DNA of 64,000 nt. Source: Octopus sinensis (taxonomy: Eukaryota). A program made the position numbers and the translations under genes. Each line of letters begins with the position of its first letter. Positions within the stretch are counted from its first letter, which is position 1. The stretch is from NCBI RefSeq assembly GCF_006345805.1, contig NC_043017.1, positions 3,472,001-3,536,000 of the forward strand, in the 5' to 3' direction. Under the pieces are notes generated by a model. The model was given only the letters and a program-made list of their open reading frames with translations. It had not been told where the DNA came from and did not search any database. Shown here one piece after another: positions 5,761 through 61,834 of the stretch.

Positions 5761-6335
5761 GATAGCTTCCAGTAGATCAATATCTCCGGTGACCCTGAAT
5801 AGGGATGGAAACTGCTAAGTATTGATGTACCATAGCCATATTTAACTTTAAATAACCGGGGAATAACTAATGAAGGTCTTACTGAGTGATGCTAAGAGAA
5901 GAAGTGTTTGGCCATTTTTGGACAATTTCTAGAAATCAGCAAATGCTCATGGTTCAAAGGTTTTCTCAGATACATCATTAGCAATTACATCACATGTGGC
6001 AAATTCAGTGGCTTTCTCAATGCAGGCAGGTTTCTAAGCAAAGCATTTTGATATGATCCCTCACTGTGTAGTTCCGTATGTGTGTGTGTGTGTGTATAAA
6101 TTTGATTAGAGGTTGTGTTAACCTCATGAAGGGATGGTTTCATCCGAGGAAATACTGGTTCAATACTTAGTATTTTGGGGGAATTAATTTCTTTAAAATA
6201 ATAAGGCACATATATATATAGTTTATATTCATTTAAAAGAAGAAAAAGAAAATGGAGTTTGGGAAGATCGTTAATCTAAAATAAAATAATGATTTTATCA
6301 AGTGGTCAGCATGGAAAAGATAACATTCAAAAGTA

Positions 6336-6479
6336 ATAATTATTAAAATTATAAATTAGGGTATCTACGAGATACCACCATGCTGAAAATAGCAGCCATG
6401 GTGGTTTTTAGAATCAGATCATGGCTGCTATTTTCAGCATGGTGGTATCTTGTAGATACCCTAATTTATAATTTTAATA

Positions 6480-6484
<5 letters not shown>
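6336..6484. repeat. 65-bp near-perfect inverted repeat with 19-nt loop
   Basis: 6336-6400 is the reverse complement of 6420-6484 except G6369:T6451. Confidence 0.95.
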
Positions 6485-6517
<33 letters not shown>

Positions 6518-6519
6518 TA

Positions 6520-6685
6520 CATAGTGAGAATTTATAAAAAAACAAAAGACAAAGACGGGTATGTAAACAACAAGAATGTGTATTAGTTTAATGCTTGGGA
6601 AGTGAGAAAGTCTTTTACATTTCGAGCCTACGCTCTTTGACAGAAAGAAACACAGAAATAAACAGGGAGAGAAAATAAAAAAAGT
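6520..6685 (-). mobile_element. Penelope-like pLTR remnant between (TA)n tracts, with a degenerate minimal HHR-like motif
   Basis: Minus strand reads TCAAAGA-GCGTAGGCTC-GAAATGTA; core is non-canonical. Confidence 0.4.
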
Positions 6686-7332
6686 ATATATATATATACT
6701 GTCTCATAATATAATTAGAATTGTAGATGATTGATAATTCTTCACTTAATATTATAGACACATTGTAAAGATATCATAGGTAATTGGAGGTATTTAAATG
6801 AGTTTGTAATTGAACATTTCAGTAGACTTTAAAACAACACTATATACTCAGGCATTAAACGAAATAATCTTTACTTTATGTTGTGATGTTGACTCTTCTA
6901 TTTCTCAGTATATTTAATGGTCTAACTATGTCCATTTCTATAAACATCACATGTGAGAAAGTATATATATATATATATATATACAGCTTTCTGATGTAAT
7001 TTGGTGAAACATCAGCAACAAAACCCAATAAACTGGTTCTCTGGAAACAAAACAACAACAACAACAAAAACAACTCCAAAACAAATGGTGATATTTGTCC
7101 TGCTTTAACCTGAAATATATACAGATTCTGCTTTGCCACTCAATGCAGCGAACTGGTTATTGATCTGTAGCAATCCTGTAATCAATGAAGCTGTTATTCA
7201 CAGAAACACAATTTATAAAATAGAAAGATGAAATTAGTAAGGATAGCAAAAACTACTAAAACAAACGGAAGGCAACAGGAAAGCGTACTATTGTCGAAAC
7301 GACAAGAAAGCAAGTCAAACCATGACAAATAC

Positions 7333-7477
7333 CTAATTTTTGTAGAGTCCATATAAGGAAGCAATTTCGCATGCTGTCTTGGGTAGGATAACCTATTGGT
7401 GTACAAGCTAAGTGGGTCGACTTTTGTTAGCATCTTTGGGTTGAAGTTGGGATGGTCAGTGTCTCCAGCTAGATTGG
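7333..7477 (-). CDS. ATAT1: ATAT1 coding exon (A-NLAGDTDHPNFNPKMLTKVDPLSLYTNRLSYPRQHAKLLPYMDSTKI-R)
   Basis: Acceptor atcattgcag, donor AG|GTATTT, 145 nt. Phases 1 and 2 fit both neighbouring exons. Confidence 0.75.
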
Positions 7478-7906
7478 CTGCAATGATAACATCAACATCT
7501 CAACATCGAATGCAATCACATGCCGACAACATTGACAACAACAACACTGACATCACCAAGAAAAAAATGCAAACATCATCATCATCATCATCATCGTCAT
7601 TATAACTATCACCATCACTAGCTCCTCTGTCAATGTCAGTAAGCTAACCAGGTGGGGAAGAACTAGGTGTTTGCTTGACCTGCTAGAAACAGCAGTCATA
7701 CCTCTTTCTCTCAAAATATACCCAATGATCTTATAAAAAGGAAGGATGCTAAATAATGTAGTCCTACATATACTATGTCCTCTAAAAAGAGATGGTCATA
7801 GATGGAGCATCCCTGATGACAGGTACCTCATGTGCATGTTTTCTCTCATTGTGTTGAATTAACCAATAACTTATGAGTGAAATATGGCAGAAAGAAACTT
7901 TGTGAA

Positions 7907-8145
7907 GGCGGCGAGCTGACAGAAACGTTAGCATGCCAGGTGAAATGCTTAACGGTATTTCATCTGCCGTTATGTTCTGAGTTTAAAAATTCCTCCGAGG
8001 TCGACTTTGCCTTTCATCCTTTCGGGGGTCCATAAATTAAGTACCAGTTGTGTACTGGGGTTGATGTAATCGACTTAATCCCTTTGTATGTGCTTGTTTG
8101 TCCCCTCTATGTTAGGCTCCTTGTGGGCAATAAAGAAATAAGAAA
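7907..8145 (+). mobile_element. tRNA-derived SINE family B
   Basis: GGCGGCGAGCTG.CAGAAACGTTAGCA...GAGGTCGACTTTGCCTTTCATCCTTTCGGGG...AAGTACCAG; centre resembles the MetaSINE domain (recalled, unverified). Confidence 0.8.
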
Positions 8146-8947
8146 GAAACTTTGTGTGTACGTGTGTGCATGCGTGCGTGTGTGTGTGTTCATATACATG
8201 CATATATACTTCAATCTACTTTGGCCAGGCTCCGTCCTGGTCCTCGAAGACAAAGTCATCTCACCAAACATGGCTTTATGTATAAATATATATATGTATG
8301 TATGTATGTATGAATCGACCCTAATACTTTTTCTTTAAGCCATGTATTAACTCGACCAGTCTCTTGCCAAGTTGCAGGGATATAAAAAACACCCCCCAAC
8401 ACTGGTTGTCAAGTTGAGGCAGGGGACAAACACAGACGCAAAGGCCCACACACATGATAAACTTCTTTCAGTTCTCGTCAACCAAATCCACTCACAAGGC
8501 TTTGGTCAGCCCAAGGCTGTAGAAGAAGACACTTGCCCAAGGTGCCACAGAGTAGGACTGAACCTGGAACCACATGGTTGGGAACCAAACTTCTCATCTA
8601 GTTCTTGTTTAGCAACAGACCAACCCCTGGGGTAGCAAACATGACCCATAACATTCCAACAATGATTTATCCTACTTTACCCGACATTATATTAATGACT
8701 ACATTGACTGGTGTGTCCTTCCGTTTTCCATGATAGTAAAATGGGATCTCGAGAAGACTTGACTGCTATTTTTAACAGGTTAAGAATTTTCAGTGTTATC
8801 CTGAAGAAATATAAAATTAAGACTGCTTTGCTGGAATATGATGATGACAATGGTGATGGTGGTGATAATGATGAAGATAGTAACCATGATGGGGTGATGA
8901 CAATAGCATGAAGATGATAATGATGAAGATGATGTTGATAATGATAC

Positions 8948-9126
8948 CTCTTTGTGGTCCATTTGTTCTGTTGATTTTATTGCCAGCCTCTTCAGGTGGT
9001 GTCTTATGAGCTGAGCTGAGATATCTGCTGTGGTCGTCACCTAATGGTAAAGGAGTGGTCCGGTGTGGCTTCACTGTAGTTTGTGGAGTCCTGGTTTTAG
9101 TCGTATCGGCAATAGGATTGTAATGG
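8948..9126 (-). CDS. ATAT1: ATAT1 coding exon (S-HYNPIADTTKTRTPQTTVKPHRTTPLPLGDDHSRYLSSAHKTPPEEAGNKINRTNGPQR)
   Basis: Acceptor ctttgcag (in-frame alternative tttcag at 9150), donor AG|GTATCA, 179 nt, phases 2 and 1. Confidence 0.75.
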
Positions 9127-9320
9127 CTGCAAAGATGCCAAAGAATAGCACTGAAAATGTATGAACACACACACACATGGTGTACAAACATTCATGGGTA
9201 AAGACTATGAAATATTTAATCTAAATAGCAGCTGTCTTTAAATATTAAGGACTTTATAAGCTGAAATGAAAAAGAACAGGAAAAATTTAAGTTAAATATT
9301 TTCTCTATTATATTTTTTAA

Positions 9321-9542
9321 CTCTTTTGTTACCATATTTCTATTGAGATGCTCTGTGTTTGTTTCAATTGATTTTAAATATAACAAAGAACTTAGTAAAA
9401 TCACTTAGTTACCATTAAGCTAGTGTTAGGAACATAAATTGTGACTAAGGTTTGGTGGAAGATTTTAATTCAAAACTTATGAAAACAAGACATTTGTACT
9501 ACAGAGCCAGAGCCGGATTCAGCTGGGTTGGTAACGAAAGGG
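9321..9542 (+). mobile_element. piggyBac-type MITE (family E)
   Basis: TTAA at 9317-9320 and 9543-9546. TIRs CTCTTTTGTTACC / GGTAACGAAAGGG. Same family at 13856 and 32458. Confidence 0.85.
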
Positions 9543-9637
9543 TTAAGAGACATGAGATCCCTCCTTAGTTCAAAATACTTTCTAGTTATTGTTGTGTAGT
9601 TCCAAGTCAGCCTTGACTGAGTAAAGCAAGCACAAAC

Positions 9638-9717
9638 CTTTCTTTCAGAGAGGTCTTTGCTTCAGGAGGAGCTGGTTTTAAATTGGTTACAGAAAGAAGG
9701 TCTTTATCCTTTGGATA
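9638..9717 (-). CDS. ATAT1: ATAT1 coding exon (YPKDKDLLSVTNLKPAPPEAKTSLKE)
   Basis: Acceptor tctcttttatgtag, donor AG|GTTTGT, 80 nt. Phases 0 and 2 exactly bridge the flanking exons. Confidence 0.75.
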
Positions 9718-9961
9718 CTACATAAAAGAGAATGAGAAAGAGAATGAATGATTGTGAGTGTGTGTGTGTGTGAGAGAGAGAGAGATTTTTCTTTGCTGCA
9801 GAAACAACAAAAATAGATTACTATACAAAAAAAAAAGACTAATGATACAAAATAATGATAAACTTTTATACATCATACACTATACAAATATAAAAATATA
9901 TTTACTCATGAATGAATATATATATGCACATATATATATATACATACATACATATGTGTGT

Positions 9962-10001
<40 letters not shown>

Positions 10002-10382
10002 TAGTATTTGGAGCATAAGCTTATAGAAAATTTTGCTGGAAAGTTTAAATTAAGGTCACCTTAAAACAGGAAGTCTGTATCAGTCACAGAGCCTAGATGT
10101 ATCTATCTATACACAAACCATCTGTTCTTACATGGATTTTTCCCAGGCTAATATTACTTGGCTGAACACATCTTACTGAAGCCATTTTACAGCTGGATGC
10201 CTTTCCTGTCATTAACTGCTACCCGTTTTTCAATCAAAGCACCCAGCCCCACCCACCTTCTTTCTCTGTTACTATCATCTGTTACTCGTCAACGTCCATC
10301 AAGGAACCCACTGCTCCATCTCCCGGTGCTAACGAATACACTCAGTCACTCACAAATCAAAATAACAACAAACAAGTCTTAC

Positions 10383-10537
10383 ATCTTGCTGCTTGGTTAA
10401 CACTTGGGTATTCTCTGCTGATGCTTTTGAAATTGGTTCCCATTTCGCAGGAACCGTTTCCTTTTCATGCAAGTTTAGTCTGTTGATGGAAATTTGTGGT
10501 TCGGCATTTTTATTTGGGAGAATTTGCTCATGGTTAT
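10383..10537 (-). CDS. ATAT1: ATAT1 coding exon (D-NHEQILPNKNAEPQISINRLNLHEKETVPAKWEPISKASAENTQVLTKQQD)
   Basis: Strong polypyrimidine acceptor tttgtttctgtctag, donor GAT|GTAAGA, 155 nt, phases 1 and 0. Confidence 0.78.
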
Positions 10538-10776
10538 CTAGACAGAAACAAAAAAAAACAGAAAGAAAAGATAAGAAAATACAGATTTTTACACTTTTAC
10601 ACATTTGTATGTATATGCGTGTGTGTGTTTGTACAAGAGCCCACTGGTCTATTCAAAGATATGATGACTCCCCTAGGGCTGTTGTCATGATAAACCACAC
10701 CCAATACAGCCTGTAAATCTATTAACTGACCTAAATATTAGGAGAGTGCTATTTATGCAAATTGGATTTTCCAGTT

Positions 10777-10824
<48 letters not shown>

Positions 10825-11067
10825 GTGGATGGTGGTTTTACACTGTGGTTAAAGCACATGAATAAAAACACATATACTAACAAGGACCATAATTGTCTGA
10901 AAAGTGCCAGCCGAGTCACATTTTTAGTGACATTTGTAATTCTCCTTTTCGGTGAAACACTGCAAACTGCTGTTTATATCAATTTTATATATACACATTA
11001 GTGAATTGCTTATTTGGATGACAAAATCCTAAATACTAATGGCAAAGTGGGTCTGGAAAGCGCCAAA

Positions 11068-11139
11068 GCCAAGCCTGGCTTAACTGATGAAGCAATGGAA
11101 ATTGCTGAAACTGATGCATCAGTATTAAGCATTCTCGGT
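11068..11139 (+). ncRNA. Type I hammerhead ribozyme, copy 1
   Basis: Stem I GCTTAA/TTAAGC; core CTGATGA 11084-11090; stem II AGCAAT-GGAA-ATTGCT; GAAA 11107-11110; palindromic stem III ACTGATGCATCAGT; GUA cleavage after 11124; outer stem GCCAAG/CTCGGT. Confidence 0.92.
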
Positions 11140-11395
11140 CAATTATGGTCCCTGTTAGTGTACGTATGTGTTTTCCTTCATGTGTGTTAACTACATCATT
11201 AGAGTGTTTTAGCTCTTATTTCTAGCACCTTAGTCACATTTAGTGACATTTGTAATTCTCCTTCTTGGGTAAATATTGCAAACTGCTGTTCATGTTAATT
11301 TTATATAGACACATTAATGAATCGCTGAATCATCCAATTATTTGGACGATGGAAACATAAATACTAACGGCAAAGTGAGTCTGGAAAGAGCCAGA

Positions 11396-11466
11396 GTTGA
11401 GCAGGTTTAGCTGACGAGGCGAAGGAAATTGCCGAAACTGATGCATCAGTATTAAACATTCTCAAT
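11396..11466 (+). ncRNA. Type I hammerhead ribozyme, copy 2
   Basis: Stem I GTTTAG/TTAAAC; core CTGACGA 11411-11417; stem II GGCGA/TTGCC; GAAA 11434-11437; same stem III; GUA cleavage after 11451; outer stem GTTGAG/CTCAAT. Confidence 0.92.
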
Positions 11467-12056
11467 CAGCACTTTTCAGCGATTAAAATTAAAACGGTTA
11501 AAATACAGTACTAAGAAGAGAATCTATTTGCAGATGAGTTGTTTTAAAACTTACAATGATTCATATAATGCAGCAGTCTCTTGTTCAATCTGATATCTGT
11601 TGGATGAAACAGTCACGATATTAGTTTAGTATAACTGTCACTTCAATAACGCTAGACAGCTTCATGGATGAAATAGTAACGATAACATGTAAGATCCATC
11701 TTAATGTTTATAGATACAATATATGCCACAGTTTTGCTTGATAACTGCATACATATAATAACCAGGCTATGAGGCATTTTGGTACTGCTTATTTGGTACC
11801 ACTGATTGGATACTGGCTTATTTCGCATATGTTGTTTTAATGTTTCTCTTGTTTTAAAGTTTTCTCTCTCTCTCTCTCTCTATGTCTCATCCTTTATTTG
11901 TCTGTTTATGTTATCGCTGTTGCCATCATAGTCATCATTTAGCACCTGTTTTCCATGCTGGCATGGGTTGGACAGTTTGGCTGGAGATGGCAAGCCAGAG
12001 AGCTGCACCACACTCCACTCTGCTTTGGCTTGGTTTCTATAGCTAGATGCCCGTCC

Positions 12057-12290
12057 TAATCTATTATATAAAATCCGCTCTGTCTGTCTGTGTGTGTGCG
12101 TTCTCGGATCTCAGGCATCCCCCATCCGACTGCACTCAAATTTGATATGTAGATACCGACAGTATCAGGGCGTGTATAAGTCTTGAAAAAATTACAAAAA
12201 TCGATTCCAGGTGAGAATGCGATCGATAAAGCCGTGGGAATGTGCATTTGTAAAATCGTTTTTCTTGGAATAGAACAAAAGTCTATCTTT
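12057..12290 (+). mobile_element. Helentron/DINE-like non-autonomous element end (tentative)
   Basis: CTAATCTATTATATAAAATCCGCTCTGTCTGTCTGTGTGTG start typical of HINE/DINE-like elements; other end not resolved. Confidence 0.35.
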
Positions 12291-12799
12291 ATTTCTTCTT
12301 ATGCTGGTGTTTCAAATTTAGGTTACATCAGTGTTTCTCAAAGGGGAGGCCTGTGGGACGGTCGGACAAGTTATTTTGAGAAAATTTGGTTTAAATGTTT
12401 GATAACTCAGCTTGTGTTTTGCTTGTGTTTACTACTCCACGGAATGTACCATATGCCTTTTACATGATACTGGTACGGGTGCTCTTCATATATCAGTGGC
12501 ACAGGTGCCTTTTACATTCCACAGGCATGGGTGCTTTCTATGTGTCAACGGCAATGGCCACAACCACGATTTCACTTAGCTTGATAGGTCTCATATTTTT
12601 TATTTCTGTGTATGAGAAGAGGGGAAGTGTTTATGTTGACAGTGTTCAGTTAATAAGGATAAGCTGCTATGGCTCACACTACCCCAAAGTGTCTGAATTT
12701 GTATTCCCCACCCATGCCAGCATGGAGGGTGGATGTTAAACGGTGATGGTGATGAATGAATTGAAGCTCTGAACATGATCTTTACACTTCACAAGCAAA

Positions 12800-13025
12800 T
12801 GATGACTACGGCTACGGTGTCTGTGCGATTCCACGTGCTTGCTCTCCCAGTGGAGCATTTGTTAAATTTGCAATCTGGGCTGCAGGCAAAAGTGTTACTT
12901 TGCCGACTGGAACTTTAGAGGCAACCACCAGACATGGTCAGCCTTCATGAGGGATGCGGTGAACTCTTTGGTTGGAATTAGCTCAACCTATCCCAGGTGA
13001 ATGTTACCGCAAGTATAAGTAAGTA
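12800..13025 (+). mobile_element. RTE-clade LINE 3' end
   Basis: Translates ..NHQTWSAFMRDAVNSLVGISSTYPR*MLPQV*, followed by CAAGTATAAGTAAGTA tail, typical of RTE termini. Confidence 0.65.
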
Positions 13026-13385
13026 GTTGATAAATTGTAATGTCTGTCTGTGTCTTTCTCACTCATTCTTTCTCTCTGAATGTCTATATATTTCTGTGTA
13101 TATGTGTGTTTACCTCCAGTGCCAAAACAGGCTGCTCAATGTCCAGTCATCCATGCCGAATCATCAGTGCCTAAACAGCTGCACCCAATTGTCTCATTTC
13201 ACAAGAACCATAGAGTACTGATTTCAAATTTTTGACACAAGACCAGCAATTTTGGGGTGAGGGCTTAAGTCTATTACACTGACCCCCCCAATACTCAGCT
13301 GGTATTCATTTTATCGACACCGAAAGGATAAAAGGCATAGTTGACCTTTTTGGAATTTGAACTCAGAACGTAAAGACAGACAAAA

Positions 13386-13678
13386 TGCTAAATCTGCTAG
13401 AAATAGCAACCAGCTCTCTCACAATCAAGCCATATCTTAACTAATGAAAGAACATGTTAGATGGTGTATTTCTAGATATGCTCGGAAAGACAATATAGTC
13501 TCACAAATGATCCTAAGTCTGCTGGATAAGGGCTGAACAGGACCCAATATTTCCATCATACTTTGATACTGTGTACTGGAATAATAGTGCTGTGTAGTAT
13601 ATCCATCAACAACATCATCATTTAATGTCTGCTTTCCATGCTGGCATGGGTTAGACGGTTTGTCTGGAACTAGCAAGC
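13386..13678. repeat. Arm A of a 293-bp inverted duplication (partner 17350-17642)
   Basis: Reverse complement of 17350-17642 with 2 mismatches found by hand; includes non-repeat sequence plus a family D tail. Confidence 0.93.
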
Positions 13679-13855
13679 ATGCTGACAATTGTCAGCTCGC
13701 TGCCTTATAACCATAGATTACCTGATAACTATACATATAATAGTCACTTCCATGTTGCTTGATAGTCATAAATATAAGATATGTCTCAATATTTGTTGGT
13801 ATCTTGATAAATATAATATATAGCTAAAGTTGCTTGATAGCCATGTAGTATTAAT

Positions 13856-14060
13856 TAACCCTTTCATTACTGTATTTATTTTGAGATGTTCTGCGATTCT
13901 TTCAATTAATTTAAAATATAACAAAGAATTTAGTAAAATAACTTAGTTATCATTCAGCTAGTGTTAGGAACATAATTTGTGACTAAGGTTTGGTGGAAGA
14001 TTTTAATTCAGAACTTATGAGAACAAGACATTTGTACTCAGAACCAGAACCAGTTTCGAA
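13856..14060 (+). mobile_element. piggyBac-type MITE family E, right end truncated
   Basis: TTAACCCTTTCATTACTGT start; internal sequence matches 32458-32678. Confidence 0.75.
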
Positions 14061-14543
14061 ATTTGGGGAAGGTACTAATTAGTTAAATCGACCCCAGTGT
14101 TTCACTGGTACTTAATTTATTGACCTCCAAAAGGGTGAAAGGCAAAGTCGATCTTGGCAAAATTTGAACTCAGAATACCGCTCAGCATTTCATCCAGTGT
14201 GCTAATGATTTTGTCAGCTCACCGCCTAATTAATAAGTGTGTATGACAGCCACTTCAATATTGTTTGATGTCTGACAAAAATTATATCCATCTCAATAAT
14301 GCTTTGTTATATTTATAAAATATATCTCAATTTTTCTTGACAAACATGAAATTAGTTGATGATTGTGTACATATATTGTATGTGGTTGCAGACATGGTGA
14401 AGGAGTTCATAAGAATGCAATTTGCTGTTTAGATTGTAAGGATTACACTGTTCTTTCTATGCAGGTTCCTAGAGGGTTTGTCAGAGGAAAATTTCAAATT
14501 TGAAAGCAGGAGAAACTTCACTTATGGGTCAGGGGTTACTTAC

Positions 14544-14591
14544 TTATGTGTTGAGGGATGAAAGACGAAGTTGACAAACACGAGATTGGAA
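14544..14591 (-). CDS. ATAT1: Candidate ATAT1 48-nt cassette exon (V-PISCLSTSSFIPQHI)
   Basis: Acceptor ccctttattttccaag, consensus donor AA|GTAAGT. Phase 1/1, no stop introduced. Confidence 0.45.
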   Translation of the reverse strand, partial: FQSRVCQLRLSSLNT

Positions 14592-15360
14592 CTTGGAAAA
14601 TAAAGGGACTTAACTGAGAATCTCAGAGCATTTAATCCAGCACTGTGATTTTCTGCTAATTCATCACTTCTCATAGAGCTATAAATATTAATTTTATACA
14701 CTACATGGACAGAAGGCGTTAAATTTTGGGGAAGGATGTGGTCAAAGAAGTCAAGCCCCAATATCTGGTGAGTACTTTATTTTATCAACCTAAAGAATGA
14801 AAGGTAGGGTCAATCAAAGAGAAATTTGAACTAAGAATATCAAAGGAATATAATTAAATATTGGTTTCAAATTTTGGCACAAGACCAGTAATTTCAGGGG
14901 AGTAGGTAGTTTGTAGAAAAGCAGTAGAAGGCAAAAGTGGGTCAAAATTAGGCAGTAGAGAAAGAGTGGTCAGGTTGTATAGCAAGTGTGATGAAGCACA
15001 GAGAGAGCAGTAGGGTCTAGTAGAATGATAGATAGATAAGCAGAGAGAGAATTAGTAAGGCGATAGAGAAAGAATATTGATGAAGCATAGAGGGAGCGGT
15101 AAGGCAGTCAGTGGATGAGAAGGAGTAATAAGGCAGTAGAGAGAGAGAAGAGTAGTAGGGAAGGCGAGAGAGGGAGAAAGAAAGATGGAGTGGAAGAGCA
15201 GGAGAGAAACAGTTATAAGGCAATAGAGAAACCTTAGAAGACAGATATATATATATATATATTGATAGAAATGGTAAAACAACTAGAGAATGAAAGAGAC
15301 CTCAATATTATGTAAATAGAGGAATTTATCTATAAATATAATACGTGACAATTATTCGGT

Positions 15361-15432
15361 AGCCATGATAAAACTCCGAGTTTCAGACGTCGGGGCGGAA
15401 ACCCACACCGCCATCTCTTCAGTTATCCGGCC
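15361..15432 (-). ncRNA. Penelope-type type I hammerhead-like motif (variant), sense to ATAT1
   Basis: Minus strand: GATAA-CTGAAGA-GATG..CGTC-T-GAAA-CTCGGAG-T-T-TTATC. Stem I GATAA/TTATC with outer GGCC/GGCT, near-palindromic stem III, GUU triplet. One extra U before G12. Confidence 0.6.
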
Positions 15433-15835
15433 ATCAAAAAAATACTATATATATATATATACTTTATTTTATTTGTTAAGGAATAAAAATTCCGGCATCA
15501 CAGGGGTTCAAATTATTCTCAATGAGGAAATATAAGTTTTTTTCTTTTAGAGATAATAGGCCTTCATCCCAACCATATAAAGAATTTTAATTTAATTTAA
15601 TACTTACTACTTATATTTATATATATATAGCGTGGGCATGGCTGTGTGGTTAGGGAGCTTGCTTCCCAACTACATGGTTTCGGGTTCAGTCCCACTGCGT
15701 GACACTTTGGGTAGGTGTCTTCCGCTATAACCCCGAGACAACCGAAGCTTTGTGATTGAATTCGGTAGGTGGAAGTTACTGCCGTGTGTGTATGTGTGCG
15801 TATAGCTGCTCAGTGCCTCTCCGAAAGAGAGAGAG

Positions 15836-15880
<45 letters not shown>

Positions 15881-15988
15881 AGTGTGTGTGTGTGTGGAGC
15901 AAGGCAATAGAGAGGGACAGCATAAAACAGAAGAGAAACATATACAAGTATACATTAATTACTGGTTAATTGATTGAATATAGATTAC

Positions 15989-16139
15989 CTTTCTTTTTCT
16001 CAGAGAAGAATCCACGGTATATCACAAAGTTGTTTGTCTGAGGTATGGAATGAACGAGGTTGTAGTGTTTTTTGAGAAATGAACTAAATTTGAATGAAGG
16101 TTTGTCAATGGCTAACTGGCAAGGCAGCAGTCTTGTGTC
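15989..16139 (-). CDS. ATAT1: ATAT1 coding exon 5 (DTRLLPCQLAIDKPSFKFSSFLKKHYNLVHSIPQTNNFVIYRGFFSEKKK)
   Basis: Aligns to the ATAT1 motif QLAIDRPS..FL.KHYNL...PQVNNFVIFEGFF carrying catalytic Asp157. Canonical AG/GT, 151 nt. Confidence 0.96.
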
Positions 16140-30190: not shown

Positions 30191-30211
30191 TACAAAATTT
30201 CACAGACTCAG

Positions 30212-30590
30212 TGGTTACAGCTGGGCTGTCTTTAATCATAAATCTGTTTGACAAGGGTTGCTTCGGTTGCTGAATAGCTATAACAACAACAGACACATTG
30301 ATTAATGTTGTCCTAGATACACTATGACGAAGACTTACTGGTTACAGCTGGACTGTCTTTAACCATAAACCTGCTTGATCATGTAAGGATTGGAAGCTGA
30401 ACAGCTATAGTAACAACAGACACATTGATTAATATTGTCCTAGATACACTATGACGAAACTTTCTGGCTACAGCTGGACTCTCTCTAATCATAAATCTGC
30501 TTGACCAGGGTTGCTTTGGGATTTAAATAGCTACAGCAACAAAACACACATTGACTAGTGTTGTCCTAGATACACAATGACAGCCCAACT
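30212..30590 (+). repeat. Three diverged tandem units of about 127 bp
   Basis: TGGT/CTACAGCTGG starts at 30212, 30339 and 30465. Confidence 0.85.
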
Positions 30591-30611: not shown

Positions 30612-31010
30612 TAGGTGCAGGAGCGGCTGTGTGGTAAGTAGCTTGCTTACCAACCACATGGTTCCGGGTTCAGTCCCACTGCATGGCACCTTGGGCAAGT
30701 GTCTTCTACTATAGCCTCGGGCCAACCAAAGCCTTGTGAGTGGATTTGGTAGACGGAAACTGAAAGAAGCCCAACGTATATTTGTATTTGTATATATATA
30801 TGTGTGTGTGTATTTGTCCCACCAGCATCGCTTGACAACCGATGCTGGTGTGTTTATATCCCCGTCACTTAGCGGTTCGGCAAAAGAGACCAATAGAATA
30901 TGTACTGGGCTTACAAAAGAATAAGTCCTGGGGTCGATTTGTTTGACTAAAGGCGGTGCTCCAGCATCGCTGCAGTCAAAGGACTGAAACAAGTAAAAGA
31001 GTAAAAGAAT
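30612..31010 (+). mobile_element. SINE family A, full length
   Basis: Complete head to TAAAAGA tail. Confidence 0.88.
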
Positions 31011-44116: not shown

Positions 44117-44528
44117 TTTACTCTTTTACTGGTTTCAGTCATTTGACTGCAGCCATGCTGGAGCACCACCTTTAGTTGAGCAACTCGACCCCGGGACTTA
44201 TTCTTTGTAAGCCCAGTACTTATTCTATCGGTCTCTTTTGCCGAACCGCTAAGTGATGGGGACGTAAACACACCAACATCGGTTGTCAAGCAATGCTAGG
44301 GGGACAAACACAGACACACAAACATATACACACACATACATATATATATATATATACATATATACGACAGGCTTCTTTCAGTTTCCGTCTACCAAATCCA
44401 CTCACAAGGCATTGGTCAGCCCGAGGCTATAGTAGAAGACACTTGCCCAAGATGCCACGCAGTGGGATTGAATCCAGAACCATGTAGTTGGTAAGCAAGC
44501 TACTTACCACACAGCCACTCCTGCGCCT
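44117..44528 (-). mobile_element. SINE family A, full length
   Basis: Reverse complement of family A. Confidence 0.88.
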
Positions 44529-44926: not shown

Positions 44927-45735
44927 GAGTTCCACCTGTGACCACCGCTCCTGTTTTTAGATACAGTGTTCTAACAATCATCTACACCCCAGTGAACGAT
45001 GGTCAATCATTTTCTATCTGTGGACCCTTTTGATTACTATTTTATTCTGGTGGACCCCTTAAGCCAGAGTTCCACCTGTGACCATAGTTCCTGTTTTTAG
45101 ATACAGTGTTCTAACAATCATCTACACCCCAGTGAACGATGGTCAATCATTTTCTATCTGTGGACCCTTTTGATTACTATTTTATTCTGGTGGACCCCTT
45201 AAGCCAGAGTTCCACCTGTGACCATAGTTCCTGTTTTTAGATACAGTGTTTTAACAATTATCTACACCCCAGTGAACGATGGTCAATCATTTTCTATCTG
45301 TGGACCCTTTTGATTACTATTTTATTCTGGTGGACCCCTTAAGCCAGAGTTCCACCTGTGACCATAGTTCCTGTTTTTAGATATAGTGTTTTAACAATCA
45401 TCTACACCCCAGTGAACGATGGTCAATCATTTTCTATCTGTGGACCCTTTTGATTACTATTTTATTCTGGTGGACCCCTTAAGCCAGAGTTCCACCTGTG
45501 ACCATAGTTCCTGTTTTTAGATATAGTGTTTTAACAATCATCTACACCCCAGTGAACGATGGTCAATCATTTTCTATCTGTGGACCCCTTTCATTACTAT
45601 TTTATTCTGGTGGACCCCTAAAGCCAGAGTTCCACCTGTGACCATAGTTCCTGTTTTTGGATACAGTGTTCTAACAATTACCTACACCCCAGTGAACGAT
45701 GGTCAATCATTTTCTATCTGTGGACCCTTAAAGCC
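44927..45735 (+). repeat. 140-bp tandem array, about 5.8 near-identical units
   Basis: TCCACCTGTG recurs at 44931, 45071, 45211, 45351, 45491 and 45631. Confidence 0.95.
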
Positions 45736-45844: not shown

Positions 45845-46235
45845 AGGCGCAAGAGTGGCTGTGTGGTAAGTAGCTTGCTAACCAACCACATGGTTCCGGG
45901 TTCAGTCCCACTGCGTGGCATCTTGGGCAAGTGTCTTCTGCTATAGCCCCGGGCCGACCAATGCCTTGTGAGTGGATTTGGTAGATGGAAACTGAAAGAA
46001 GCCTGTCGTATATATGTATATATATTTGTGTGTGTGTCTGTGTTTGTCCCCCTAGCATTGCTTGACAACCAATGCTGGTGTGTTTACGTCGCCGTCACTT
46101 AGCGGTTCGGCAAAAGAGACCGATAGAATAAGTACTGGGCTTACAAAGAATAAGTCCCGGGGTTGATTTGCTCGACTAAAGGCGGTGCTCCAGCATGGCC
46201 GCAGTCAAATGACTGAAACAAGTAAAAAGTAAAAG
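45845..46235 (+). mobile_element. SINE family A, full length
   Basis: Young copy, near-identical to 55672 and 60765. Confidence 0.88.
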
Positions 46236-51275: not shown

Positions 51276-53559
51276 ATATTACCCACTGTGACAAAAGGAT
51301 GTTCTCATCATATGACAGGTAACACTGTAATTAAATTCACTTTCGGTGTTGCCTGTTTTATTAAATTATTTCATCATCATCATCACCATTGGCCATAGTG
51401 TGGTGTATTCATGGTCAATGGTTCATAAACAGCATTAAAAGATCACATGTACAGAAGTTGTTCGCCTTTTGGGACCCTCTCCCACACACACGCACACTCA
51501 AACACATAAACACACACACACAGACATGCACACACACATGCATGCACACACACCAAGTGTCATTGACACTAGGAAAATCAAATTAATGATGGAAAATTTC
51601 CAAAGTACACACTTTGGAATTCCATTGCTCTGGCTGTACCTAAACTTGCCAAGAAATTGCAGTTCTGTTAGAACAATAACCTAAATGATGGTTCTTAGTT
51701 AAATTACGTTCTCATCGTGAAACTGCAATTAATGAGGAGAACCTTCGTTAAAAGAACAAAAACCACTTGAAATGCTAGCTGTTGTTGTGTGTTTTCTCTT
51801 GTCATTTTGTCATTGACCAAATTATAGTCAGGATTGTCGTGTAGCACCAAATCAACACTGACCGAGCAAACTGTTTATGTACTTTTACTATTTCCAGTCA
51901 TTTGGCTGTGGCCATGCTGGAGCAGTGCCCTAATTCGAACAAGTCACGTAAATGACACCATTCGAGCATGATCGTTACCTGCGTCGCCTTACTAGCACCT
52001 GTGCCGGTGGCATGTGTAAAAGATTCGAGCGAGGTTGTTGCCAGTACTGCCTGACTGGCCCCGTGCCGGTGGCATGTAAAAGCACCCACTACACTCTTGG
52101 AGTGGTTGGCATTAAGAAGGGCATCCAGCTGTAGAAACTCTGCCAGGTCAAGATTGGAGCCTGGTGCAGCCATCTGGTTCGCCAGCCCTCAGTCATTCGT
52201 CCAACCCATGCTAGCATGGAAAGCGGACGTTAAACGATGATGATGATGATGATGATGATATTTTCATAATCAAATATTATTAGGAATTGTAAAAAAAAAT
52301 AAAAATTATCAAAATATTTTGTGTATTATACTAGTATAAGCAATTTATTGCAGATAAATTTTAACAACCAAATCTTATTTGGACCCCTAAGGGCTACATA
52401 AGGATCTCAGTTGAGAACCATAGCTCTACAGAGACACCTTCGAGGCCTCCCTAACATACACACACACACACGTACATATACATTCTCTATTTTTCTGTCT
52501 GTCTCTCTCTTTCTCATACACATGCTAGACTAGACGGGGAACTGGAGATCCTAAAACCCCCCTATTTTCCATTGTTGACATTTTCGTATAAATGTCAGCT
52601 CCTTTCTCTTTCTTATATTGTCTTTCATAAACTCTACGGAGCAGAGTTGTCAACTTGAGTACTGTTAACATACACCCATATAATTACTACTGGCAATAAA
52701 TTTAACACATACACACACACACACTTGATTGACTAACACACACCCACACTTAATTGACTGTCACACACACACAGTAAGAAACAGATACATACACAGAAGC
52801 ACTCACGAAAAACTGACAACACATTCATACAGCTAGACACATGCACGACGGAGACACATACAGTTATTTGTTCACATACACACACACACACAGACTCATA
52901 GGTACTAAGGTCCTCATACATAATGTATATAGTCAGACATATGCACACACACACATACGTATACACTTAATATGTAACAGTCACGAGGGTAACTTAAAAG
53001 AAACACCACCATCATCATCATCATCATTATAGACATTTCTATGAAGAATAAGGTTATACAACACTTCCTTCTCAGCTGTAGCCCACCACTAATACTAACG
53101 AGTTGATAATATCGTTTGCTATTTATGCCTTAGATACCCCCCCACACACACTCCTGAACAGCAACACTACTCCCACTAGCAGGAACACAATCAACACTGA
53201 CACTCCTAACGACCACCACCACTGCCACAACTATCTCTAAACAGAATTACCACCAAAAAACACAATCACTAAAATATATGCAAAAAATGACAGGATGTTC
53301 ATGGTTGGATTGTTTTTGACCATTGTCTACTCGGTCGTCAGTGACCTTGGGCTAAATGTCAACAGCAACCATGAACAAACGGACTTACAAACACTACTTT
53401 ATAAAGTTCTGTGTCCACTCGCTGGCTTTTTCTACTGCTACTGCAGTGTTTCCTGCTCCTCTGGATTATCCGAATGATGTAGTGACCCCCACCTCCTTTC
53501 CATTGTCCTCTCGTCACACTCTTACCATTGTCACATACGAAAGCATCTTTCCCCAATCT

Positions 53560-54599
53560 ACCACCACCACCACCTCCACCACCACTGAACCCACCACCAT
53601 CACCACGGCCATCTTCACCTCCACCACCATCACCACGACAACTACTATGACAACCGTTAGGCGAGCTGGCTGAATCGTTAGGACCCCGGGCGAAATGCTT
53701 AGCGGTATTTCGTCAGTCTTTATGTTCTGAGTTCAAATTCCGCCGAGGTCAACTTTACCTTTCATCCTTTCGGGATCGATAAATTAAGTACCAGTTACGC
53801 ACTGGGTCCGTTTGTCTGCCCTTGTTTGTTCCCTCTGTGTTTAACCCCTTGTGGGTAGTAAAGAAATAGGTTTTTCTTCTGCTGTTATGTTCTGAGTTCA
53901 AATTCCGCCGAGATCAACTTTGCCTTTCATCCTTTTGGTGGTCGATAAATTAAGTACCAGTTACACACTGGGGTCGATGTAATCGACTTAATCCCCTTGT
54001 CTGTCCTTGTTTGTCCCCTCTGTGTTTAGCCCCTTGTGGGCAATAAAAAAAATTAAACACTATGACAGCCATTATCACCATCATCGTAACCACCACCTCT
54101 ACCATCACCACTACCAAAATAGCAACCACCAACACTACCACCATCACCGTCATCATCATCATCACCATAACTACTACCTTGTCCATGATGGCCACCACTA
54201 CTACTATGATCACTGCTTTCCTTCCACATAAGCCACCTACATCTCCAACATCATCAAACCACCACAATAACCAATACCATTGCCGACACCACCACCATCA
54301 CCACAACCTCAACAAGTACCATCACCACTACAGCTACCACCACCCAAACCACAACCACCATCACCACCACCACCACCACCATGTCACCTAATATTGACTG
54401 CCACAATTTTTCATGGACCAAATCTAGACATTAAAAAGACTCCAGCTGATTGCACAAAGTGGTGGTGGTGGTGGTGGTGGTTGTGGTGGTGGTTGTGGTG
54501 GTAGTGGTGGTGGTGGTGGTGGTGGTGGTGGTGGTGGTGGTGTGGTGGTGGTTGTGGTGGTAGTGGTGGTGGTGGTGGTGGTGGTGGTGGTGGTGGTGG

Positions 54600-54630
<31 letters not shown>

Positions 54631-55330
54631 GGTGCTGGCAGAAGGGGGAGGTGAGTATCCAATAAAGAAAACAAAAGAAAAAACAGAACAATGGTTCTAT
54701 TAACACCTGTCTAGGACATGATCACTACCACCACCACCACTACTAACACCACCACCACTGTTGCGACTACCACCTCCCTGACTACCACCTTCACCATCAC
54801 CACCATTACTACCACCACAACCACAGCTACCACCCCTACCATCACTGCTACTACTACCACTGCAACCGCTGTCACCATCACCACTGTTACCGACAATCAT
54901 CACCACCACCACCACATCACTCTCAGCATCATAACTTCCACTACTACCACCACCACCACCACATCACTTCCATTAACACTATCATTACAGTCATCATAAC
55001 TTCCACCACTACCACCACCACCACCGCCGCATCCACAGCTAGTACCTGGTGTTGGCAAGGTAAATGACCACTCAACAACATCAACATCATTATCAACACC
55101 TGTCCTTTGTCCACTACCTCCTCCTCCTCCACAGGCACTGACATCATTAACTCCTTCCACTACCATATCGCAATTATCTCCGAATGCCAATACATCATCA
55201 TCATCGTCATCATCGTCATCACCTTCATTTCTATTACAACCAATTCCACAAACCCTAGGAATATCACTTCTGCTGTTATTATTATCATTACCATTCTGCC
55301 GAGGTGGAGTTAGGCATTCATCCTTTTGGG
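53560..55330. repeat. (CAC/ACC/CAT)-rich low-complexity region with a (GGT)n block at 54459-54634; two SINE B copies at 53663-54050
   Basis: Direct reading; source of the poly-T/H/V/W/P ORFs. Confidence 0.9.
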
Positions 55331-55475: not shown

Positions 55476-55671
55476 ATCCGCCTTCACTAAGGCGGAGGTA
55501 TTGTTTTCACTTGTGTTTGTTTGTTTGTCCGTGGACAAGATGATATCTCAAGAACTGGCAGATAGATTCAGATGAAACTTTCAGGGACGTTTGGCCTCGT
55601 GACTGACACAAACTGATTAGATTTTGGGATCGATCCGGTACTGGACAAGGATTTTTGGATTATTTTCCCTA

Positions 55672-56060
55672 GTAGCTTGCTAACCAACCACATGGTTCCG
55701 GGTTCAGTCCCACTGCGTGGCATCTTGGGCAAGTGTCTTCTGCTATAGCCCCAGGCCGACCAATGCCTTGTGAGTGGATTTGGTAGACGGAAACTGAAAG
55801 AAGCCTGTTGTATATATGTATATATATATATATATATGTGTATGTGTGTGGTGTGTGTGTGTTTGTCCCCCTAGCATTGCTTGACAACCGATGCTGGTGT
55901 GTTTTCGTCCCCGTCACTTAGCGGTTTGGCAAAAGAGACTGATAGAATAAGTACTGGGCTTACGAAGAATAAGTCCCGGGGTTGATTTGCTCGACTAAAG
56001 GCGGTGCTCCAGCATGGCCGCAGTCAAATGACTGAAACAAGTAAAAGAGTAAAAAAGAGT
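55672..56060 (+). mobile_element. SINE family A, 5'-truncated
   Basis: Family A consensus. Confidence 0.85.
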
Positions 56061-61150: not shown

Positions 61151-61834
61151 TATATGTGTGTCTGTGTGTCACAATTAGTGACAGTTGAATTCTTCTTTTT
61201 TTTGTTTTATATTTTGTATAGCCACCTTCATTATTTTATAATTTCCACTTTACCATTTTACTGAATCATCCATTGATTCATATGGTAAATACTGTATACT
61301 GACAGTCCGGATGTGACCAAACCATTCAATGAAGGAGTAATCATCACTGATGAGCATTAATTTCAAGTGAAACTAGAATTCTCACTTGCTGTGGGGAGGT
61401 TAGCTCCCCTGTCAGTACATAGACATGTGCTTCTTTGCAGCTAAGAGGGCTTTTACCTCTTATTTCTAGCAGTGTAGGTGCTACCCTGCGCCCTCAGTCA
61501 TTATTAGTGACAATCAAATTCTTCCTTTTTGGTTTTATATTGCTTATAGCCATCTTCATTATTTTATATATATATTTATATATAATACATATTCTTTTAT
61601 TCATTTACTTGTTTCAGTCATGTGACTGTGGCCATGCTGGAGCACTGCATTTAGTCGCTCAAACTGACCCCAGGACTTACCTTTTGTAAGCCTAGTACTT
61701 ATTCTATTGGTCTCTTTTGCCAAACTGCTAAGTTATGGGGATGTAAACACACCGACGTCGGTGTCAAGTGATGGGAGTGGGGACAAACACAGACACACAA
61801 ATACATACATACAAATATATATGTATATATATAT

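What the first reader, a model, noticed from the sequence alone, without database searches (positions are those of the whole stretch)
10897..11479. Tandem pair of canonical type I hammerhead ribozymes with covariation: a retrozyme-like unit predicted to release a 327-nt RNA
Sequence shows two complete HHRs (11068-11139, 11396-11466), each with an intact CUGANGA/GAAA core, a GUA site and the identical palindromic stem III ACTGATGCATCAGT. The copies differ mostly by pair-preserving changes. Stem I GCTTAA/TTAAGC becomes GTTTAG/TTAAAC; the stem II closing A-U becomes G-C; the outer stem I GCCAAG/CTCGGT becomes GTTGAG/CTCAAT across an internal loop placed for loop-2 tertiary contact. Established: tandem type I HHR repeats define metazoan non-LTR retrozymes, which yield small circular RNAs, and Penelope pLTRs carry HHRs with palindromic stem III that can cleave as dimers. 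Inference: plus-strand transcription, antisense to ATAT1, would excise 11125-11451 (327 nt) as a monomer able to circularise. An 11-bp inverted repeat (CTGAAAAGTGC 10897-10907 / GCACTTTTCAG 11469-11479) brackets the dimer. I cannot tell whether this family is already described in cephalopods.
Basis: partly seen in the sequence, partly recalled or inferred. Interest (0 to 1): 0.92.

Follow-up and report, generated by a model that had tools for sequence, protein, structure and literature searches.

The report
Hammerhead-ribozyme tandem repeat (animal retrozyme)
Two neighbouring copies of a 327-base repeat each carry an intact self-cleaving hammerhead RNA motif kept in shape by compensating mutations, which marks this as a new mollusc (probably cephalopod) example of the known "retrozyme" class of small mobile elements, not a new kind of element.

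Summary
Two complete type I hammerhead motifs lie on the + strand at 11068-11139 and 11396-11466. Both cores are intact, and the GUA sites after 11124 and 11451 define a 327-nt unit. A loose hammerhead descriptor finds only these two in 64 kb, against 0.013 expected by chance. Of 14 substitutions between them, 12 fall in helices and 4 are double compensatory changes (P about 4e-4). The core differs only at the free position N7.

The motifs sit in a 1.75-unit head-to-tail repeat that is 83% identical, 37% GC and non-coding. No RT or GIY-YIG domain was found in 6000-16000. It is the inner end of an inverted partial unit (10844-10907) that starts 4 nt after the cleavage site. This unit abuts a (TA)n(GT)n microsatellite, as described for Penelope-like element insertions. 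A decayed relative lies at 61160-61570.

Best reading: an old insertion of an animal non-LTR retrozyme, probably mobilised by Penelope-like elements. Caveats:
- Rfam finds nothing at gathering score.
- HHR1 has A10.1-U11.1.
- The circular monomer is not unusually self-paired.
- No further copies could be retrieved.
- Cleavage, circles and the antisense-to-ATAT1 placement are untested.

It is a new member of a known kind, of moderate interest.

The parts
10777..10824 (.). (TA)n(GT)n microsatellite, about 20 nt upstream of the left end of the element
   Evidence: Read directly. (TA)n microsatellites are reported as preferred targets of some Penelope-like elements (PMC8557442).
10844..10907 (-). 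Inverted partial unit. Its reverse complement aligns to 11129-11195, which is unit positions 5-71 counted from the cleavage site.
   Evidence: the repeat finder I1/I2. blastn 78% over 64 nt, E=1e-8. Local alignment. nhmmer E=1.2e-4.
10909..11124 (+). First, 5'-truncated unit of the direct array (unit positions about 103-327). It ends at the HHR1 cleavage site.
   Evidence: Direct repeats D1-D3. blastn 79% over 235 nt, E=3e-54. Global alignment.
10915..10931 (+). Hairpin motif GTCAC-N7-GTGAC, 6 nt inside the 5' boundary of the direct array. Second copy at 11233-11247.
   Evidence: Pattern search: 5 matches (three sites, two of them palindromic and counted on both strands) against 0.26 expected, all within E1 and E2; the N7 copy at 10915-10931 was found by a separate search. 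It lies in the block of invariant columns in the 4-sequence alignment.
11068..11139 (+). HHR1, a type I hammerhead: core CUGAUGA...GAAA, A10.1-U11.1, 14-nt palindromic stem III
   Evidence: CM R1 scores 100.3 bits, by construction.
11124..11125 (+). Predicted self-cleavage site 1 (GUA|U)
   Evidence: Position of H17 in the descriptor match. Inference from the established hammerhead mechanism.
11125..11451 (+). Predicted 327-nt monomer RNA between the two cleavage sites
   Evidence: GC 37.3%. Circular MFE -69.5 kcal/mol, z=-0.08 against shuffles.
11396..11466 (+). HHR2, a type I hammerhead: core CUGACGA...GAAA, G10.1-C11.1, same stem III
11451..11452 (+). Predicted self-cleavage site 2 (GUA|U)
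11452..11468 (+). First 17 nt of a third unit (3' strand of HHR2 stem I), after which the direct array ends
   Evidence: Alignment to 11125-11141.
11469..11485 (+). 3' tail GCACTTTTCAGCGATTA. It forms an inverted repeat (11 bp exact, 17 bp with one gap and one mismatch) with 10891-10907, the inner end of the inverted partial unit.
   Evidence: the repeat finder I15. Alignment 'afterHHR2'.
61160..61570 (+). E2, a decayed relative of the same repeat family. It has 1.25 units of period about 325 and no functional hammerhead core or stems. It starts at the same GTCAC hairpin motif and lies between two SINE-like copies.
   Evidence: blastn. Sequence. Alignment. nhmmer E=1.3e-6 between E2 and E1. 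Not found by the descriptor or by CM R1.

Best explanation
E1 (10844-11485) is an old, rearranged genomic insertion of an animal non-LTR retrozyme. This is a short, AT-rich, non-coding tandem repeat whose unit carries a type I hammerhead ribozyme.

Proposed mechanism, marked as shown or inferred:
1. Shown: each unit encodes a complete hammerhead whose helices were kept by compensatory substitution while the units diverged by about 17%. The ribozyme fold was therefore under selection in the lineages that gave rise to the two units.
2. Inferred: a + strand transcript spanning both units would cleave after A11124 and A11451. [quoted passage not shown] A host RNA ligase could circularise it, as shown experimentally for coral, mussel and axolotl retrozymes.
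3. Inferred from energy models: the hairpin form of the 14-nt palindromic helix III is weak (-2.8 kcal/mol), but the palindrome pairs perfectly between units (-22 kcal/mol). Cleavage is therefore likely to be favoured in multimeric transcripts through a double hammerhead and disfavoured in the monomer.
4. Inferred from architecture: copies were inserted by the reverse transcriptase and GIY-YIG endonuclease of autonomous Penelope-like elements. The features are a partial tandem, an inverted partial copy directly upstream, a short tail, a microsatellite flank and no coding capacity of its own.

This particular locus may no longer be active.
For: - Motif and chance level.
- Covariation.
- Tandem structure with 327-bp period and 83% identity.
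- GC 37%.
- No Pfam domain in nearly all open stretches of at least 45 aa across 6000-16000. No long ORF in the window.
- No tRNA-like head.
- Inverted partial unit and tail.
- Second, decayed family member 50 kb away that starts at the same unit position.
- Helix III hairpin against duplex, and double-hammerhead cofold. The MFE of the dimeric transcript contains the 14-bp inter-unit helix.
- Class definition and experimental precedent in a mollusc: PMC7229834 and PMC7761336.
- Palindromic helix III and dimeric action: PMC4209133.
- Insertion architecture and microsatellite targets of Penelope-like elements: PMC8557442.
- Retrozymes as derivatives of the terminal repeats (pLTRs) of these elements: bioRxiv 10.64898/2026.07.22.740005.
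- Penelope-like elements abundant and recently active in octopus: PMC13282606.
Against: - Only two full motifs and one decayed relative could be examined. No other copy was found in any collection, so family-level covariation, copy number and consensus ends are unknown.
- The two units differ by 17%. A fresh rolling-circle insertion would have identical units.
- The circular monomer is no more self-paired than shuffles (z=-0.08, 56% paired against 62%), unlike described retrozyme circles.
- HHR1 has A10.1-U11.1, and its isolated MFE fold sequesters the core.
- Rfam models do not reach gathering score.
- The inverted copy does not share its 3' end with the direct array, unlike the textbook Penelope-like arrangement.
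- No target-site duplication was found.
- There are no expression data.
Confidence: 0.8

Rival explanations
1. E1 is a fragment of an autonomous Penelope-like element. It would be a tandemised pLTR whose RT/EN body has been deleted or lies elsewhere, not a separate non-autonomous family.
For: The insertion architecture is Penelope-like. pLTRs carry type I hammerheads with palindromic helix III. Xenopus retrozymes are sister to pLTRs.
Against: No RT or GIY-YIG signal in open stretches of 6000-16000. No long ORF anywhere in the window. The hammerheads of these elements are usually minimal, with helix III nearly absent; here helix III is 5 bp as a hairpin or 14 bp as a duplex, with a long helix I. 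E2 is also ORF-less.
Confidence: 0.1
2. E1 is a dead relic. The hammerhead shapes are inherited from once-active ancestors, and neither copy cleaves or is transcribed today. The locus is neutral repeat DNA.
For: 17% divergence between units. A decayed sister element E2. A monomer that is not self-paired. A10.1-U11.1 and a competing fold in HHR1. This is compatible with the main explanation, because it concerns present activity only.
Against: Both cores are intact at all fixed positions, and only 2 of 23 pairs are broken between the copies. HHR2 has a fully canonical core and helices.
Confidence: 0.35
3. The hammerheads act in cis on the neighbouring ATAT1 transcript, like the intronic or 3'-UTR hammerheads of amniotes.
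For: Proximity to ATAT1, whose exons lie at 21428-15990 on the minus strand.
Against: The motifs are on the opposite strand. No hammerhead is found on the minus strand. The repeat lies 4.5 kb past an in-frame stop that follows the last conserved exon. A related copy sits in unrelated repeat-rich DNA.
Confidence: 0.02
4. Chance resemblance to a hammerhead in AT-rich repeat DNA.
For: Rfam gives no hit at gathering score.
Against: Descriptor expectation is 0.013 per 64 kb even with loose thresholds. Compensatory changes have P about 4e-4. Slid-partner controls collapse to 24-43% paired.
Confidence: 0.01

Closest known systems
Non-LTR retrozymes of the mussel Mytilus galloprovincialis (Cervera & de la Pena 2020, PMC7229834)
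   Same: Mollusc host. Type I hammerhead in every unit of a short head-to-tail repeat (350-390 bp there, 327 bp here). Low GC and no ORF. Coexistence with Penelope-like elements in the phylum. The hammerhead lacks an obvious match to the archetypal loop1-loop2 nucleotides.
   Different: No detectable sequence similarity was tested or available. The mussel circles are shown experimentally and are highly self-paired, whereas this monomer is not. Here helix III is a 14-nt perfect palindrome and helix II is 5-6 bp.
Amphibian satellite-2 / axolotl retrozymes (HHR_Amex1/2) acting as double hammerheads
   Same: Unit size of about 330-350 nt, tandem arrays, a palindromic helix III element, and predicted preference for dimeric cleavage (PMC7229834).
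   Different: Amphibian helix III is 1-2 bp with a palindromic tetraloop and cannot cleave well as a monomer. Here a 5-bp hairpin is possible, so monomeric cleavage is not excluded. The amphibian copy number is enormous, and here it is unknown.
Minimal hammerheads in the pLTRs of Penelope-like elements (Cervera & de la Pena 2014, PMC4209133)
   Same: Type I topology and a palindromic helix III region that suggests dimers. The same insertion hallmarks apply: partial tandem, adjacent inverted copy, microsatellite flank (PMC8557442).
   Different: Those motifs lack helix III and tertiary loops and flank a 3-kb RT/EN ORF. Here the ribozyme is full-sized and no ORF is linked.
Plant LTR retrozymes (Cervera et al. 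2016, PMC4918200)
   Same: Non-autonomous retroelements whose RNA is cut to unit length by hammerheads and circularised.
   Different: Those have type III hammerheads in true LTRs, PBS/PPT, about 700-nt units, GC above 55% and Ty3/Gypsy mobilisation. None of these applies here.
Schistosoma Sm-alpha SINE-like repeats with type I hammerheads (own knowledge, not checked here)
   Same: Short dispersed and tandem repeats with a canonical type I hammerhead that has an internal loop in helix I.
   Different: Sm-alpha has a pol III SINE-like head. No tRNA-like sequence is present in E1.

Membership tests
Hammerhead ribozyme, type I | Conserved core C3 U4 G5 A6 N7 G8 A9 ... G12 A13 A14, A15.1-U16.1, H17 not G | tested here: met
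   Both copies have it. The only core difference is at the free position N7, U against C.
Hammerhead ribozyme, type I | Three helices around the core, with helices II and III closed by loops and helix I open | tested here: met
   Stem I is 6 bp, plus an internal loop and a further 6 bp. Stem II is 5-6 bp. Stem III is 5 bp with a UGCA loop.
Hammerhead ribozyme, type I | Helices supported by covariation | tested here: met
   4 double compensatory and 2 wobble changes in 23 pairs, from only two sequences. P=3.6e-4; 22/500 shuffles reach it.
Hammerhead ribozyme, type I | Score at or above the Rfam gathering threshold (clan CL00010) | tested here: not met
   No hit at gathering score. The best hits are Hammerhead_3 at 20.4 and 17.3 bits against 48.5, mis-threaded. 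This probably reflects the long helix III and helix I, but it remains a failed test of the curated model.
Hammerhead ribozyme, type I | G10.1-C11.1 pair at the base of helix II | tested here: inconclusive
   HHR2 has G-C and HHR1 has A-U. From established hammerhead biochemistry, A-U here is expected to lower activity, not abolish it.
Hammerhead ribozyme, type I | Loop 1 / loop 2 tertiary contacts | tested here: inconclusive
   The internal loop sits 6 bp from the core, as in canonical type I motifs (PMC4209133). Helix II is 5-6 bp, not 4 bp. Loop nucleotides could not be matched to a reference.
Hammerhead ribozyme, type I | Site-specific self-cleavage | not testable with these tools
   Needs in-vitro transcription.
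Animal non-LTR retrozyme | Head-to-tail repeats of about 150-450 bp, each with a type I hammerhead | tested here: met
   1.75 units of 327 bp carrying two hammerheads.
Animal non-LTR retrozyme | Low GC (below 45-50%) | tested here: met
   37%.
Animal non-LTR retrozyme | No coding capacity and no LTRs | tested here: met
   ORFs in E1 are at most 79 aa. No Pfam hit in 6000-16000. No homologue of any of the six-frame peptides. PBS/PPT were not searched for specifically.
Animal non-LTR retrozyme | Multi-copy family dispersed in the genome | tested here: inconclusive
   Two loci in 64 kb, E1 and the decayed E2. The source genome could not be searched. No copies in other collections.
Animal non-LTR retrozyme | Unit-length RNA predicted to be stable and highly self-paired | tested here: not met
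   Circular MFE z=-0.08 and paired fraction 0.56 against 0.62 in shuffles. Linear z=-0.53.
Animal non-LTR retrozyme | Expression as linear and circular unit-length RNA | not testable with these tools
   No transcriptome access.
Animal non-LTR retrozyme | Co-occurrence with autonomous Penelope-like elements in the genome | not tested
   None in this window. The literature reports abundant Penelope-like elements in octopus and other cephalopods (PMC13282606, PMC8967140), but the host species of the window is not established.
Penelope-like element (autonomous) | ORF with RT and GIY-YIG endonuclease between pLTRs | tested here: not met
Penelope-like element insertion architecture | Partial tandem, an inverted truncated copy directly upstream, a short tail, and microsatellite target preference | tested here: inconclusive
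   The partial tandem, adjacent inverted partial copy, 17-nt tail and (TA)n(GT)n flank are all present. The inverted copy does not share its 3' end with the direct array, and no target-site duplication was found.

The most novel reading that the evidence does not exclude
The locus may preserve a scar of the mobilisation mechanism.

- The inverted partial unit begins 4 nt from the predicted cleavage site. This would be expected if a Penelope-like reverse transcriptase ran to, or switched strands at, the 5'-OH end of a hammerhead-cleaved RNA. It would be genomic evidence that cleaved retrozyme RNA is the template.
- The 14-nt perfect palindrome in helix III may work as a switch: cleave as a double hammerhead in multimers, stay intact as a monomeric circle.
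- If the family is still active in a cephalopod, its transition-rich, pair-preserving divergence (29 transitions to 10 transversions) could also bear on RNA editing of retrozyme intermediates.
Probability: 0.2. Interest if true: 0.6.

Novelty: new member of a known kind. Interest (0 to 1): 0.35.

Why it matters
It adds a cephalopod-like mollusc genome to the hosts of hammerhead-bearing retrozymes. Neither the retrozyme papers nor the octopus repeat-annotation papers held in the library link the two.

It shows that Rfam's curated hammerhead models miss such copies, so such elements may sit unrecognised among unclassified repeats in genome annotations. One octopus annotation lists 893 unclassified SINE families.

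The locus gives a clean two-copy example of compensatory evolution in a ribozyme. Its insertion architecture also supports the recent proposal that animal retrozymes depend on Penelope-like elements. It does not reveal a new kind of element or mechanism.

Tried and rejected
- **Rfam.** At gathering score on the whole window, and at E up to 10 on the locus, there are no usable hammerhead hits. A sub-threshold glmS hit at 11376-11514 is only the core of HHR2.
- **Other copies by DNA pattern.**
  - Viral contigs: 0.
  - Metagenome contigs with the hammerhead pattern: 0.
  - Metagenome contigs with a conserved unit 22-mer: 1 hit. This is a chance match at a bacterial gene start.
  - Bacterial and archaeal genomes: 2 hits, both chance matches inside coding sequence.
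- **Other copies by protein.** I searched the 58-aa ORF across HHR1 and a concatenation of all six-frame open stretches of E1 against 5.8 billion predicted proteins. Neither gave a hit.
- **The same locus in other assemblies.** Exact-ORF look-up found nothing on record.
- **Host identification.** The best ATAT1 hit is the cuttlefish Acanthosepion pharaonis at 51% identity. This suggests a mollusc or cephalopod but does not name the species. The 32-kb cuttlefish ATAT1 locus has no related hammerhead.
- **CM built from the two copies.** With filters off it finds nothing else in the window. The hammerhead of E2 is too decayed.
- **Target-site duplication.** Only a 7-mer is shared, which is not significant.
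- **tRNA-like SINE head.** None.
- **Pfam gap.** The six-frame scan left out the last five open stretches of one minus-strand frame, at the low-coordinate end of 6000-16000. By eye they are low-complexity.
- **Rejected readings.** A terminal inverted repeat of a DNA transposon, because the repeat is explained by the inverted partial unit. Cis-regulation of ATAT1, because the motifs are on the wrong strand.
Full report
**1. What is in the sequence**

On the + strand there are two complete type I hammerhead motifs.

- HHR1 (11068-11139):
  - outer stem I GCCAAG/CTCGGT, with one A.C mismatch
  - internal loop CCUG/AUU
  - inner stem I GCUUAA/UUAAGC
  - core CUGAUGA
  - stem II AGCAAU-GGAA-AUUGCU
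  - GAAA
  - stem III ACUGAUGCAUCAGU
  - A17 at 11124
- HHR2 (11396-11466):
  - outer stem I GUUGAG/CUCAAU, fully paired
  - internal loop CAG/AUU
  - inner stem I GUUUAG/UUAAAC
  - core CUGACGA
  - stem II GGCGA-AGGAAA-UUGCC
  - GAAA
  - the same stem III
  - A17 at 11451

Cleavage after 11124 and 11451 would release 11125-11451, which is 327 nt. The 11-bp inverted repeat 10897-10907 / 11469-11479 is exact.

**2. Is it more than chance?**

I wrote a deliberately loose type I descriptor: helix I at least 4 bp, II at least 3, III at least 2, CUGANGA, GAAA, U16.1, H17. It finds only these two sites on both strands of the window. It finds none in a 32-kb cuttlefish control locus. In random 64-kb first-order Markov sequences it finds a mean of 0.013 hits.

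The two motifs differ at 14 positions. Twelve of these lie in the 46 paired columns. They make 4 double compensatory changes (C-G to U-A three times, A-U to G-C once), 2 wobble changes and 2 broken pairs. All fixed core positions are untouched, and the only core change is at the free position N7.

I then placed the same number of transitions and transversions at random.
- P(at least 4 compensatory) = 3.6e-4.
- The joint probability, with at most 2 broken pairs and an intact core, is 5.5e-5.

The pair-counting tool gives 95.7% paired cells. When the 3' partners are slid by 1-3 columns this falls to 24-43%.

The hammerhead segment is no more conserved overall than the rest of the unit (80% against 84% identity). 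What is constrained is where the changes fall. This is the signature of selection on the fold.

**3. What Rfam says**

Rfam gives nothing at gathering score on the whole window. At a permissive E-value the only clan member reported is Hammerhead_3. It scores 20.4 and 17.3 bits against a cut-off of 48.5, with a mis-threaded alignment that catches only the core. The curated models therefore miss this variant. The likely cause is the long palindromic helix III and the extended helix I, but I did not test that directly.

**4. Anatomy of the element**

The motifs belong to a head-to-tail repeat of period 327 bp.
- The first unit, 10909-11124, is 5'-truncated.
- It is followed by a full unit, 11125-11451.
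- Then come 17 nt of a third unit.
- The units are 83% identical, with 29 transitions and 10 transversions. GC is 37%.

Directly upstream lies 10844-10907, which is the reverse complement of 11129-11195 (blastn E=1e-8, nhmmer E=1e-4). This is an inverted partial unit whose inner end lies 4 nt from the predicted cleavage site.

It is not an independent terminal inverted repeat.

A (TA)n(GT)n microsatellite (10777-10824) ends about 20 nt upstream of the left end. I found no target-site duplication.

A second, decayed member of the family lies at 61160-61570.
- It has 1.25 units of period about 325, and nhmmer gives E=1.3e-6 against E1.
- Its hammerhead region no longer satisfies the descriptor or the covariance model.
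- Both E1's direct array and E2 begin 6-8 nt upstream of the same conserved hairpin motif, GTCAC-N5/7-GTGAC. The N5 pattern gives 5 matches (three sites, two of them palindromic and counted on both strands) against 0.26 expected, and the N7 copy at 10915-10931 was found separately. All four sites lie in E1 and E2, and nowhere else in the window.

**5. Surroundings**

- No ORF in E1 exceeds 79 aa.
- No ORF in the window looks like a real gene, apart from ATAT1 exons.
- Nearly all open stretches of at least 45 aa across 6000-16000 give no Pfam hit, so no RT or GIY-YIG domain is linked.
- ARAGORN finds no tRNA-like sequence.
- ATAT1 exons are on the minus strand at 21428-21360, 18963-18883, 18126-17962 and 16148-15990.
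- The last of these exons runs into an in-frame stop. E1 therefore lies about 4.5 kb beyond the last recognisable coding exon. Whether it is inside the transcription unit is unknown.
- The best ATAT1 relative in the protein collection is from the cuttlefish Acanthosepion pharaonis, at 51% identity.
- The window carries about 30 copies or fragments of a 370-bp SINE-like repeat. This fits what is reported for octopus genomes (PMC13282606, PMC8967140). The host is therefore probably a cephalopod, but that is not proven.

**6. How it most likely works**

*Shown.* There are two intact hammerheads whose helices were maintained by compensation.

*Inferred from the established hammerhead mechanism and from experiments on coral, mussel and axolotl retrozymes (PMC7229834).* A + strand transcript is cut at both GUA sites. 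[quoted passage not shown] It is circularised by a host ligase and serves as a template for reverse transcription.

*Energy models add a specific prediction.*
- The helix III hairpin is worth only -2.8 kcal/mol. The 14-bp duplex between two units is worth -22.3 kcal/mol.
- A homodimer cofold gives a textbook double hammerhead with swapped helix I strands.
- The MFE of the 416-nt dimeric transcript contains the inter-unit helix III. It is 15 kcal/mol below the structure with both monomeric hammerheads enforced.
- In isolation, the 3' arm of helix III can instead pair with the core ACUGAUG. The modelled hammerhead helices are then populated at only 0.2% in HHR1 and 9% in HHR2.

This fits the idea, set out in PMC4209133, that palindromic helix III motifs cleave in multimers and spare monomeric circles. 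These are thermodynamic models without tertiary contacts, so they are not evidence of activity.

*Mobilisation.* The element combines a partial tandem, an inverted truncated copy directly upstream, a short tail and a microsatellite flank. This is the combination described for Penelope-like element insertions (PMC8557442). A 2026 preprint argues that animal retrozymes derive from the terminal repeats (pLTRs) of such elements. I take mobilisation by Penelope-like elements as the most likely route. The match is imperfect, because the inverted copy does not share its 3' end with the direct array.

**7. Points against, or limits**

- Only two motifs could be compared.
- The units are 17% diverged. 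Either the insertion is old, or the two units came from different family variants.
- The circular monomer is not more self-paired than shuffled sequences (z=-0.08), unlike published retrozyme circles.
- HHR1 carries A10.1-U11.1.
- There are no expression or cleavage data.
- Every attempt to retrieve further copies failed.

**8. Comparison with what is known, and novelty**

The element meets the sequence-level definition of an animal non-LTR retrozyme: tandem units of 150-450 bp, each with a type I hammerhead, low GC, non-coding, no LTR. It fails one descriptive feature, the highly self-paired circle. Several features remain untestable here.

It differs from the usual metazoan type I motif (helix II of 4 bp, helix III of 1-2 bp; PMC4209133) in having a 5-6 bp helix II and a fully palindromic 14-nt helix III.

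Neither the retrozyme papers nor the cephalopod repeat papers in the held library describe hammerhead repeats in cephalopods. That is absence from a limited library, not proof of novelty.

**9. Verdict**

The finding is real and correctly interpreted. It is a new member of a known kind. Interest is 0.35.

Noticed in passing
window 61160-61570: Decayed relative (E2) of the hammerhead repeat. It has 1.25 units of period about 325. Its hammerhead region (61347-61373 keeps CUGAUGA...GAAA) has lost helices II and III, although it still has a palindrome (AGAATTCT) where helix III would be. It lies between two SINE-like copies.
   Followed up: partly
window 10915-10931, 11233-11247, 61168-61182, 61497-61511: Hairpin motif GTCAC-N5/7-GTGAC, in the block of invariant columns of the repeat-family alignment. 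It lies 6-8 nt inside the 5' boundary of both insertions. It could be a recognition or start signal. It occurs nowhere else in the window.
   Followed up: partly
window, about 30 places, e.g. 60766-61135, 45846-46215, 44136-44527, 30614-30986, 55671-56034: A SINE-like repeat of about 370 bp makes up a large share of the window (34 blastn hits at 69-96% identity). This fits reports that SINEs are very abundant in octopus genomes.
   Followed up: partly
window 21428-15990, minus strand: Four exons of an alpha-tubulin N-acetyltransferase (ATAT1/MEC-17) gene. The best database relative is from the cuttlefish Acanthosepion pharaonis at 51% identity. An in-frame stop follows the last conserved exon, near 15960.
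   Followed up: partly
window 44927-45729 and 30204-30581: Tandem arrays of a 140-bp unit (5.7 copies, 97% matches) and a 127-bp unit (3 copies, 80%). Neither contains a hammerhead by descriptor or covariance model.
   Followed up: no
window 11376-11514: Sub-threshold Rfam glmS ribozyme hit (23.3 bits against 37, E=0.004). It rests on the GACGAGG...GAAA core of HHR2 and is an artefact of the hammerhead.
   Followed up: yes
window 10844-10907 with 11129-11195: In any + strand transcript that starts upstream of 10844, these arms could form an imperfect duplex of about 64 bp (78% complementary). The duplex would sequester the 3' strand of HHR1 helix I. It would also be a plausible substrate for dsRNA-acting enzymes.
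   Followed up: no
window 53300-55200: Long (GTG)n/(CAC)n-type trinucleotide runs create spurious His-, Thr- and Val-rich ORFs on both strands.
   Followed up: no
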